A DNA stretch of 63,745 bases, the filler included, from Olpidium bornovanus S191 (taxonomy: Eukaryota; Fungi; Olpidiomycota): NCBI GenBank assembly GCA_017911155.1. It is 28 parts of 28 records of this genome, joined end to end, with 100 filler letters (N's around TTAATTAATTAA, not from the genome) between each part and the next. Parts side by side here need not be neighbours in the genome. Positions count along the whole stretch, not along the records: positions 25,729 to 27,825 come from JAEFCI010013457.1; 27 more parts are not named here. One strand, written 5' to 3'. Every line of letters starts with the position of its first letter. The first letter of the stretch is position 1. The notes under the pieces are model-generated. The model was given only the letters and a program-made list of their open reading frames with translations. It was not told the origin of the DNA and did not search any database. The translations under genes were made by a program, and so were the position numbers. Of this stretch, positions 25,629-27,825 are shown one piece after another.

Positions 25629-25793
25629 NNNNNNNNNNNNNNNNNNNNNNNNNNNNNNNNNNNNNNNNNNNNTTAATTAATTAANNNNNNNNNNNNNNNN
25701 NNNNNNNNNNNNNNNNNNNNNNNNNNNNAGCGGGGCCCCCAAACCAGAAACGCCAAGGGGGTTTTTCGGCGACCGCGCCCCTTTTGGGGCCGG

Positions 25794-25841
<48 letters not shown>

Positions 25842-26519
25842 GTCAACGTTCAGACTTCTGCTCCGTCACGGGCATGGAGGGAGATCGCGGAAGTCAAACG
25901 AAGGGCAAAGCCCGACCAGCGGTGGGGCACAATCGCTTCCCGCAGCTGTCGCAGCGGGCACGCCGCCAGAAGCCGCACAAACGCTTCGCACGCGTTTCGG
26001 AAGCTGCTGCGCGGTATCCAGTGCCCAGAAAAAGGGCGTTTCAGGAAGCCGGCGCAACCGGAACGCCGGAAAATCGAAGAATTCGAGAGTGAGCTTATCA
26101 GCGAGCGGCCTCGAAATGCAAATCTGGCCACGCGCCGCCGAGCGGGCGGATCACACCTGCCCTGTTTTCGACCTTCCTTCCACGGTGCTTTTCAAACGGT
26201 CGGATCCCGTAAGCCGTAAGCGGTTGTTTTCGGGCGCTCCGACGAACTACAGCTCCCGAATAAATGCCTCCGGATCACCCGTGCCCGTCGGTTGCCCCAG
26301 TTTGCCGCGCATTCCCATCGAGCAAGTAAATGTTGCAGAGATCCTTTTCGCGTCTGACCCGGTTCTCACCAACGGTGGCGTCTGTACCTCCCGGCCGCAC
26401 ACTTCGAAACGGCAGAAAACAACGCAACGCCACCAAAACGACAAAGAAACGGCCGCCTTGTCAGCAGCTGCGGTCATCCTCGTCAGCCGTTTCTTCCGAT
26501 GGCTACGTGGACAATGTAG

Positions 26520-27200
26520 TACATTGACCCCTCAACGGGGATACCGCATTTAAGCGCCTGTTTCCGGATGAATAACCGCTCATCTCGTTCCTGGAGGCCG
26601 TTATCCAGCAAACCGATTTGTTCGCGCAGGTCACCCGCTCGAAGGCGAAACAAGCCCTGAAACACCCGGGTGTATCGCCTGGCTTTCTGGCTTCCGTGCC
26701 TGGATTGCGCTTCCAGCCCGGTTGAGCTTTCCGTGACCTCTGCCGCCCCCCAAAACAGACAGCTGACTGCCGGGCGTCGCCGTAGTGGGCCATTGAATCT
26801 CTGTACCTCCCCGACGAAAGCGTGAGCTTCGATTAGGTCAACTCGGTCGTTCGGTGCGGGTATCGTTGCGGTAATGGACGACGAGGAAGTCGTCAACTGG
26901 AAGATGCCGAGAGCGGCGCTGACGTACTACTTGGACCGGATCGCATACTATGGTGACCGACCGAGAGCAGCGGGTGGTCCGGCGAGCAACGTCAACGAAA
27001 CATATCTCTGGAGACGGGACTGTTCTCCAGGAGAAGGACGAAGGAGTCGTGGAACTACCATTGTGCAAGGTGCATCGTAATGTCAATGTGCGACTTTTTC
27101 TGGTCCAAGTGCCCGGGCATCCCGGAGGGCCGTCTGTCGTAACGGTTAGTCTGTTCATCCCTCATATTTGGTATGTGCCAGCTCCCACCTCCCAGCTGCG
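26520..27200 (+). pseudogene. Degenerate Rpn-family / PD-(D/E)XK nuclease-family 'transposase' (PF12784-like)
   Basis: Colinear motifs across frames: YIDPST/DTAFKRLFPDE*PLISFLEAVI, AIESLYL, EEVVNWKMPRA (for IVEMQ), YYLDRIAYYG, WNYHCARCIVMSMCDF, LIFGMCQLP (for FIELP). Frameshifts and in-frame stops are present. Confidence 0.65.
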
Positions 27201-27704
27201 AAATTGCCTGCTTCTCCGCTCCGCCAAGCGGGCCCGGTTGATCATCCCTTCGGTCACTTTTTGTCAAAAAGTTGCACGCCATTGCTTCACTCAAAGGGGG
27301 TGGTCAGGAATCTTGTACGTCATGTAAACGACAAAGAGACCGCGGGAAAATGCCGTTCCAGACAGCCACAAGTCGTAGTCCTCACAGTCGGACGGCCTGG
27401 GATGTTCTCGGGCACTCCTCCCGCTCTAATCGAGTGAACCGTTCACGCAGGGGCGTCGCTAAATGCCAGGCAGGGAGCGATATGTCCGACAGGTTTGTTC
27501 CCGTTCTGGACGCCGAGGGAGATGTGCTTCGCGCCGGACGCGAGTGTCTCTCTCCCTTTGAATGATCAGAAGCGGCAGCGCAGCGCAGCACAAGTTGCGG
27601 TCGCCATATATGCTCCAGTGGGTGGCCTGGATCTCTCTCCACTTTGCTGATGCAGGAATATAACACGACGACTCGCGCCAGCCCTCCGCAAGCGCTTGGG
27701 GGAT

Positions 27705-27825
27705 CATGTTCAAAGACAACGACAACCAGCGGAAGTTGGACGACCTCGATCTAGACGACATCCTGGCCCGCGCGGAGCACACGGAGACAATGACCGGCGG
27801 GATCGACTCCGACGGCGGCGCGCAG
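27705..27825 (+). CDS. CHD1: Internal fragment of chromodomain helicase Chd1, just after the helicase domain
   Basis: MFKDNDNQRKLDDLDLDDILARAEHTET...DGGAQ matches the Chd1 motif MF...NQKKLE.L.LD.VL..AE. Homology stops abruptly at the CATG at 27705. Confidence 0.7.

What the first reader, a model, noticed from the sequence alone, without database searches (positions are those of the whole stretch)
26520..27200. Bacterial-type Rpn / PD-(D/E)XK nuclease relic, possibly carrying a spliceosomal intron
Seen: six motifs in the correct order across frames: YIDPST, then a +2 slip in G4 at 26537-26540, DTAFKRLFPDE*PLISFLEAVI; AIESLYL; EEVVNWKMPRA; YYLDRIAYYG; WNYHCARCIVMSMCDF; LIFGMCQLP. Established: Rpn/PF12784 proteins begin xDPxxDxAFKxxF...LISFLNAVL, have a catalytic I-E-M-Q motif and a later FIELP motif, and are abundant in intracellular bacteria. 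Seen: a 156-nt insert (26630 GT..CTGAC..TAG 26785) sits where bacterial homologs have only a few residues, and removing it keeps the frame. Inference: a bacterial gene was transferred into the fungal nucleus, possibly from an endobacterium, gained an intron and then decayed (EMQ now reads KMP). The ORF track misses it entirely.
Basis: partly seen in the sequence, partly recalled or inferred. Interest (0 to 1): 0.7.

Follow-up and report, generated by a model that had tools for sequence, protein, structure and literature searches.

The report
Possible dead bacterial-type nuclease gene remnant
A stretch of non-coding DNA next to a eukaryotic CHD1 gene piece weakly resembles the start of a bacterial Rpn/PDDEXK_2 nuclease; it may be a long-dead remnant of a transferred gene or a chance look-alike, and nothing supports an intron or any present function.

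Summary
Only the first block (26528-26650, one frame, PLNGDTAFKRLFPDE*PLISFLEAVIQQT) is clearly unusual. It is the best six-frame hit of my own PDDEXK_2 model (7.5 bits; 0 of 26,000 random 2.1-kb pieces reached it). It is also the only Pfam (PF12784, E 0.36) and NCBIfam (TIGR01784, E 0.062) hit for that stretch.

The downstream motifs are collinear, and an unbiased frameshift-aware alignment picks them, but they are weak: p about 0.008 against shuffles and against real GC-rich DNA. On their own they sit at noise level.

No standard unbiased search reaches significance. A 47-bit hit for an optimally spliced peptide proved to be an artefact, because 35 of 103 shuffled controls did the same.

If real, this is a dead remnant: at least three in-frame stops, at least two frame changes, three unexplained inserts, and the catalytic E-x-Q now reading K-M-P. 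The G4 frameshift is unnecessary and the intron is unsupported.

The contig is eukaryotic, because it carries a CHD1-like exon, so it is not a bacterial contaminant. I put a decayed relic at about 0.5 and chance at about 0.4. Interest is low.

The parts
26528..26650 (+). N-terminal signature block, one frame: PLNGDTAFKRLFPDE*PLISFLEAVIQQTDLFAQVTRSKAK. It aligns to family model positions 9-53. TGA (26525-26527) sits directly upstream, there is no start codon, and TAA lies in frame at 26573-26575.
   Evidence: Best six-frame hit of my own HMM. Frameshift-aware path. Only Pfam hit PF12784 (11 bits, E 0.36, profile 4-41) and only NCBIfam hit TIGR01784 (13.1 bits, E 0.062, profile 3-30). 47% identity over 32 residues to real members. 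0 of 26,000 random pieces reach the score.
26630..26785 (+). It holds in-frame TGA 26723-26725 and TAG 26783-26785. My alignment places the jump at 26651-26791 instead, so its edges are not defined.
   Evidence: No repeat or duplication explains it. Weak donor GTCACC. Four alternative in-frame GT..AG pairs.
26792..26833 (+). IESLYLPDESVSFD, same frame as the N-terminal block, aligned to model 54-67. The final Asp (26831-26833) falls on the family's conserved ..ILD Asp. It is followed at once by TAG 26834-26836.
   Evidence: net contribution about 5 raw bits, less than the jump penalty. No Pfam hit alone.
26862..26951 (+). IVAVMDDEEVVNWKMPRAALTYYLDRIAYY in a different frame, aligned to model 68-97 (IRAKTQNGEKINIEIQLKNQENMEKRSLYY). 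The catalytic I-E-x-Q reads W-K-M-P. R..YY is kept.
   Evidence: HMMER -0.8 bits, at the expected model position, about the 97th-99th percentile of residue shuffles. Pairwise hits fall at the equivalent place in several members. Alone, however, it hits Chromo_shadow in Pfam (E 0.14) and FN3-like repeat proteins in the exhaustive search.
27020..27097 (+). LFSRRRTKESWNYHCARCIVMSMCDF, back in the first frame, aligned to model 101-126 (LYTEQLKKGEDYSKLKKTITINILDF).
   Evidence: HMMER alone gives -2.8 bits, with only MSMCDF reported. No Pfam hit.
27161..27187 (+). I do not count it as supported.
   Evidence: Present but not used by the alignment, which finds nothing convincing beyond model position 126.

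Best explanation
The stretch 26528-27097 (+) is most likely a heavily decayed, non-functional remnant of a bacterial-type PDDEXK_2 (Rpn-family) nuclease gene. It lies in non-coding DNA about 0.6 kb upstream of a CHD1-like exon in a GC-rich eukaryote, probably a fungus.

Shown:
- The resemblance, its order along the family model, the stops and frame changes, the loss of the catalytic Glu and Gln/Lys positions, and the eukaryotic neighbour.
- GC content equal to that of the flanks.

Inferred:
- A bacterial DNA fragment entered the nuclear genome.
- It has drifted neutrally since. About half of the residues are still family-like, roughly a quarter of bases have changed, and there are several indels.

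It does nothing now. It has no start codon and no open frame. There is no evidence that it was ever expressed or spliced.
For: - N-terminal block: top six-frame hit of an independent HMM built from 32 real members (7.5 bits). 0 of 26,000 random pieces reach it, maximum 5.2. Maximum 2.0 in real GC-rich DNA.
- The same family is the only hit in Pfam and in NCBIfam for the contiguous stretch, both at the N-terminal profile positions.
- Whole-piece frameshift-aware score 33.6, against shuffles at 18.8 +/- 2.8: 0 of 1500, Gumbel p about 1e-3. 0 of 368 real-DNA pieces reach it.
- The part downstream of the N-terminal block, tested separately, scores 19.6: 10 of 1500 shuffles, 0 of 300 order-permuted models, 9 of 1168 real-DNA windows.
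- Block scores (39.7 and 47.5 raw bits, against 71 and 128 for true members) fit uniform decay with roughly half the residues retained (my arithmetic).
- The CHD1-like exon on the same piece and the equal GC content argue against a contaminant.
Against: - No unbiased standard search is significant.
- 14% of random 67-residue peptides get some Pfam hit at that level, so across all families the seed is unremarkable.
- The downstream blocks alone are noise-level and resemble unrelated families as well.
- Three inserts (about 141-156, 28 and 57 nt) are needed, and none is explained by repeats or duplication.
- No closer relative or intact copy was found anywhere.
- The family is essentially bacterial (PMC3424549), so the prior for a eukaryotic relic is low.
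Confidence: 0.5

Rival explanations
1. Chance resemblance. Ordinary non-coding eukaryotic DNA happens to translate, in one frame, into a 30-residue string like the conserved N-terminus of PDDEXK_2 proteins. The downstream 'motifs' are what any search across three frames with free jumps will find.
For: - Library-wide E-values are 0.06-0.4, and 20 of 140 random peptides get some Pfam hit at E <= 0.36.
- Optimal splicing of shuffled DNA gives PF12784 hits at E <= 1e-3 in 35 of 103 controls, the best at 3e-14.
- Shuffles reach 31-32 against 33.6 and real DNA reaches 32.7.
- An unrelated 16-residue match to the family's C-terminal motif sits on the opposite strand at 26058-26105.
- The core stretch resembles FN3 repeats and Chromo_shadow as well as it resembles this family.
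- The N-terminal block keeps 56% of a true member's score but the core at most 37%, even after optimisation.
- No relatives were found anywhere.
Against: - For this family the seed is rarer than 1 in 54 Mb of random sequence.
- The separately tested downstream part has p about 0.008 on two kinds of null.
- The blocks are collinear and beat every order-permuted model.
- The product of the two is about 4e-7 per 2-kb piece (my arithmetic).
Confidence: 0.4
2. A once functional, or still functional, eukaryotic gene of bacterial origin that gained a spliceosomal intron at 26630-26785.
For: - GT at 26630, CTGAC at 26763-26767 and AG at 26784-26785, with a length of 156 = 3 x 52.
- Removing the insert brings the spacing between the N-terminal block and the next block close to the family's.
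- Intron gain in bacterial genes transferred to fungi is documented (PMC11291939).
Against: - The donor GTCACC is far from the fungal consensus (established knowledge).
- Four in-frame GT..AG pairs are available.
- Stops remain outside the insert (26573, 26834), and so do frame changes that no splice sites explain.
- There is no start codon.
- No ORF of the piece has any homologue.
Confidence: 0.03
3. Assembly artefact: a bacterial contaminant read or a chimeric join placed next to eukaryotic sequence.
For: A 47-nt poly(A) run at 25794-25840 could mark a join. The source genome could not be found for checking.
Against: A contaminant would carry an intact gene, not one with stops and frame shifts. 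GC is 57% in the stretch and 59% in the flanks. The stretch is contiguous with a CHD1-like exon. No bacterial or metagenomic sequence matches it.
Confidence: 0.03

Closest known systems
PDDEXK_2 (Pfam PF12784) / TIGR01784, annotated by NCBI as 'Rpn family recombination-promoting nuclease/putative transposase'
   Same: The N-terminal signature D-x-x-F-K-x-L-F ... L-I-S-F-L-x-A-V-I falls at the right profile positions. Candidates for the ..ILD Asp, the R..YY motif and the I..I..DF strand follow in the same order. Real members of the modelled family carry that NCBI name on plasmids of Bacillus, Clostridium, Leptospira, Rickettsia and Cardinium.
   Different: There is no open frame and no start codon. 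Stops and frame changes are present, and three extra inserts are needed. The catalytic E-x-Q reads K-M-P, and there is no recognisable HFIELP motif or C-terminal half. It scores below every curated cut-off. It sits in a eukaryotic contig, whereas the family is listed as bacterial (PMC3424549).
RpnA-RpnE of Escherichia coli (YhgA-like, Pfam PF04754)
   Same: They belong to the same PD-(D/E)XK superfamily and share the NCBI name. RpnA is a Mg-dependent, Ca-stimulated non-specific DNA endonuclease that promotes RecA-independent recombination (PMC5350276). This is the only biochemistry known for this kind of protein.
   Different: It is a different Pfam family. No construct from the window hit PF04754, even at E <= 10. 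Nothing here could be active.
Bacterial genes transferred to fungal nuclei, some with introns gained later
   Same: If real, this would be bacterial-type coding sequence inside a eukaryotic chromosome with host-like base composition. Fungal xenologs, endobacterial donors and post-transfer intron gain are documented (PMC11291939; PMC11708051, abstract only).
   Different: Documented cases are intact genes with significant homologues and phylogenies. This one is a remnant with no significant hit, no donor and no evidence of an intron.

Membership tests
PDDEXK_2 / Rpn family (PF12784, TIGR01784) | Conserved N-terminal motif (..PKNDxxFKxLF .. LIxFLNAxL) at the start of the profile | tested here: met
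   26528-26620 aligns to my HMM positions 9-43, Pfam profile 4-41 and TIGR01784 profile 3-30. 47% identity over 32 residues to members. One in-frame stop lies inside it.
PDDEXK_2 / Rpn family (PF12784, TIGR01784) | Score above the curated cut-off on an unbiased translation (Pfam 27.4 bits; TIGR01784 52.1 bits) | tested here: not met
11 bits (Pfam) and 13.1 bits (NCBIfam) for the contiguous stretch. The 47.4 bits for an optimally spliced peptide is an artefact: 35 of 103 shuffled controls also hit.
PDDEXK_2 / Rpn family (PF12784, TIGR01784) | PD-(D/E)XK catalytic core: Asp in ..ILD.. followed by (I/V)-E-x-Q/K | tested here: not met
   A candidate Asp is present (26831-26833), but the E-x-Q position reads W-K-M-P (26898-26909). 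That stretch alone scores -0.8 bits.
PDDEXK_2 / Rpn family (PF12784, TIGR01784) | Later core motifs in order (KRxLYYW, ITINILDF, HFIELPKF) | tested here: inconclusive
   DRIAYY and IVMSMCDF are collinear, with p about 0.008 for the whole downstream part. HFIELP was not found on this strand. A look-alike lies on the other strand at 26058-26105.
PDDEXK_2 / Rpn family (PF12784, TIGR01784) | Single open reading frame of about 260-300 codons with a start codon | tested here: not met
   Stops at 26525, 26573, 26723, 26783 and 26834. At least two frame changes. No ATG/GTG/TTG-initiated ORF covers it.
YhgA-like Rpn proper (PF04754) | Match to the Transposase_31 profile | tested here: not met
   Never reported for any construct at E <= 10.
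Spliceosomal intron (fungal type) | Consensus donor GTRAGT/GTAAGT, branch CTRAY 10-40 nt before YAG, and evidence of splicing | tested here: inconclusive
   The branch-like CTGAC lies 19 nt before the AG, and TAG is the acceptor. The donor is GTCACC, and three other in-frame GT..AG pairs exist. Splicing is not testable without RNA data.

The most novel reading that the evidence does not exclude
A PDDEXK_2/Rpn-family nuclease gene moved from a bacterium, possibly an endobacterium, into a fungal nucleus. It was expressed there long enough to gain an intron and then died, with intact or younger copies elsewhere in the same genome. That would be the first documented eukaryotic lineage of this otherwise bacterial family.
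Probability: 0.04. Interest if true: 0.5.

Novelty: new member of a known kind. Interest (0 to 1): 0.15.

Why it matters
If real, it is one more fossil of bacterium-to-eukaryote DNA transfer, from a family of mobile nucleases common in intracellular bacteria. It could hint at a past bacterial associate of the host. It would not change any concept, and it has no function.

The more useful outcome is methodological. Splicing the best-looking pieces from several frames and then scoring them against the same family yields 'significant' Pfam hits from shuffled DNA about a third of the time. Findings of this type need nulls that repeat the whole procedure.

Tried and rejected
1. The result was PF12784 at 12.8 bits for the spliced construct, nothing for the raw frames, and nothing on the minus strand.

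2. Homologue searches with the reconstructed peptide: 5.8 billion proteins, plasmid tblastn, metagenome and viral contig scans. No relative was found.

3. The optimally spliced peptide scored 47 bits in Pfam. I rejected this as evidence after the same procedure on shuffled DNA gave 35 of 103 hits, the best at 3e-14.

4. Exhaustive phmmer of the unbiased frame-0 stretch against 1.84 billion representatives. It returned only repeat proteins (FN3-like and others) whose scores add up over repeats, and no PDDEXK_2 protein.

5. Identifying the source organism: the CHD1 peptide, nine concatenated ORFs, an exact 26-mer in metagenomes, and an exact-product look-up. All were empty.

6. Looking for transposon ends, repeats or a tandem duplication that would explain the inserts. 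None was found.

7. tRNA and Rfam searches. None was found.

8. Looking for a GC-rich subfamily among plasmid copies. The hits are almost all from AT-rich hosts. Matches on plasmids of listed pathogens were not fetched.

9. The G4 frameshift: rejected as unnecessary.

Full report
WHAT IS THERE

The piece (25729-27825) is 57% GC. It starts with a 47-nt poly(A) run (25794-25840). It has no tRNA or Rfam match. It holds only short ORFs, none with a homologue among 5.8 billion proteins.

Its last 144 bases (27682-27825, + strand) translate to PSASAWGIMFKDNDNQRKLDDLDLDDILARAEHTETM... This matches residues 873-904 of yeast Chd1 (E 5e-4 against all PDB chains). The contig is therefore eukaryotic, and the motif is of the type seen in yeast Chd1. 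No other CHD1 exon lies in the 1.9 kb upstream. The finding thus sits either in a long intron or next to a truncated CHD1 copy.

CHECKING THE OBSERVATION

I built an HMM from 32 non-redundant members. On plasmids the same family is annotated 'Rpn family recombination-promoting nuclease/putative transposase'.

THE N-TERMINAL BLOCK

A six-frame hmmsearch of the piece puts its best hit exactly at 26537-26620, HMM positions 11-43, at 7.5 bits.

- It is 47% identical over 32 residues to real members.
- In 26,000 random 2.1-kb pieces with the same dinucleotide statistics (54 Mb, both strands) the best score was 5.2.
- In 400 kb of real GC-rich bacterial DNA the best score was 2.0. The tail there was about four times heavier than in the random model.
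- Extrapolating at one halving per bit gives roughly 5e-5 per 2-kb piece for this family (my arithmetic).

Two curated models agree on the family. For the contiguous stretch, PF12784 is the only Pfam hit (11 bits, E 0.36, profile 4-41) and TIGR01784 is the only NCBIfam hit (13.1 bits, E 0.062, profile 3-30).

Those E-values also show the limit of this evidence. Of 140 random 67-residue peptides from shuffled copies, 20 got some Pfam hit at E <= 0.36. A seed of this strength to some family is therefore commonplace.

THE DOWNSTREAM MOTIFS

I wrote a frameshift-aware local alignment of the profile to DNA. It uses codon steps, frame slips, stops and a flat-cost jump for long inserts, and I ran it identically on the controls.

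On the real + strand it scores 33.6. The comparisons are:
- Minus strand: 18.5.
- Shuffles: 18.8 +/- 2.8, none of 1500 reaching it, maximum 31.4, Gumbel p about 1e-3.
- Two other penalty sets: 1 of 300 and 2 of 300 shuffles reach the real score.
- Real-DNA pieces: 0 of 368, maximum 32.7.

- 26792-26833, IESLYLPDESVSFD, to model 54-67.
- 26862-26951, IVAVMDDEEVVNWKMPRAALTYYLDRIAYY, to model 68-97.
- 27020-27097, LFSRRRTKESWNYHCARCIVMSMCDF, to model 101-126.

Beyond position 126 the path is plainly spurious, because it runs into the CHD1 exon. LIFGMCQLP is not used.

I then tested the downstream part apart from the seed (26621-27300 against model 44-170). It scores 19.6. This was reached by 10 of 1500 shuffles (5 and 34 of 1500 with the other two penalty sets), by 0 of 300 models with permuted block order, and by 9 of 1168 windows of real DNA. 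So p is about 0.008, with a range of 0.003-0.03.

Taken singly, the blocks are noise:
- The frame-0 stretch scores -0.8 bits, though at the right model position.
- Its best Pfam hit is Chromo_shadow (E 0.14).
- An exhaustive search of 1.84 billion proteins returned only repeat proteins such as FN3 arrays, not this family.
- A 16-residue look-alike of the HFIELPKF motif lies on the opposite strand at 26058-26105. This shows how easily such matches arise.

A CONTROL THAT MATTERED

The peptide spliced along the optimal path scored 47.4 bits (E 2.5e-12) against PF12784, above the gathering score. Doing the same to shuffled, reversed and complemented copies gave PF12784 hits at E <= 1e-3 in 35 of 103 cases, the best at 3.3e-14. 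That score is therefore no evidence at all.

THE INTRON

The 156-nt gap has GT at 26630, CTGAC at 26763-26767 and TAG at 26783-26785. Against this:
- The donor GTCACC is a poor fungal donor (established knowledge).
- Four in-frame GT..AG pairs fit the gap.
- My alignment puts the jump elsewhere (26651-26791).
- Stops remain outside the gap (26573, 26834).
- The other two gaps (26834-26861, 26952-27008) have no splice sites.
- Neither repeats nor tandem duplication explain any of the three inserts.

WEIGHING IT

For this family and this place, chance gives roughly 5e-5 x 0.008 = 4e-7 per piece (my arithmetic).

A true relic that retains about half its residues fits the block scores: 39.7 and 47.5 raw bits, against 71 and 128 for true members. 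It also fits the observed density of stops and indels.

The family is essentially bacterial (PMC3424549). No relative, donor or second copy was found. The prior for such a relic is therefore of the same small order as the chance rate. I put a dead PDDEXK_2 relic at about 0.5 and chance at about 0.4. The intron-bearing gene and the assembly artefact get a few per cent each.

COMPARISON AND VERDICT

The closest known family is PDDEXK_2/TIGR01784. The only biochemistry for this kind of protein comes from the related E. coli RpnA, a non-specific DNA endonuclease that promotes RecA-independent recombination (PMC5350276).

The window meets the N-terminal motif test. It fails the cut-off, catalytic-residue and open-frame tests. 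It can be called at most a remnant, not a member.

Transfers of bacterial genes into fungi, and later intron gain, are already documented (PMC11291939). Even if real, this is therefore a minor new instance of a known kind. Interest is low.

Noticed in passing
window 27682-27825 (+): CHD1-like exon: GIMFKDNDNQRKLDDLDLDDILARAEHTE matches yeast Chd1 residues 873-904 (E 5e-4). A possible acceptor CAG lies at 27679-27681. No other CHD1 exon lies in the 1.9 kb upstream, which implies a long intron or a truncated copy. The peptide is absent from the 5.8-billion protein collection.
   Followed up: partly
window 25729-25840: A perfect 47-nt poly(A) run (25794-25840) is preceded by 65 GC-rich bases. It could be the tail of a retroposed element ending here or an assembly join. 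There is no tRNA, Rfam or repeat match.
   Followed up: partly
window 26058-26105 (-): The minus strand translates to LADKLTLEFFDFPAFR. This aligns without gaps to the family's C-terminal LTDVLEIHFIELKKF motif (model 149-164, 17 raw bits). It is either chance or an inverted scrap of the same remnant. It does not extend.
   Followed up: partly
window 26826-27077 (+), frame 0: This 84-residue stop-free stretch hit four repeat proteins at E <= 1e-3 in the exhaustive search, the best at 1e-12. The scores sum weak matches over many repeats (V..D..V.W..P.A.ITGY, FN3-like). This is a warning about summed scores with repeat-rich targets.
   Followed up: yes
method: Peptides spliced by a frameshift-aware optimiser from shuffled DNA pass Pfam's PF12784 gathering-level E-values in about one third of trials. 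Reconstructed peptides must never be scored without procedure-matched controls.
   Followed up: yes
plasmid collection: The PDDEXK_2/Rpn family occurs on 840 plasmids, mostly Bacillus, Clostridium, Priestia and Leptospira, with a few from Rickettsia and Cardinium. Matches on plasmids of listed pathogens were seen in the table and not fetched.
   Followed up: no
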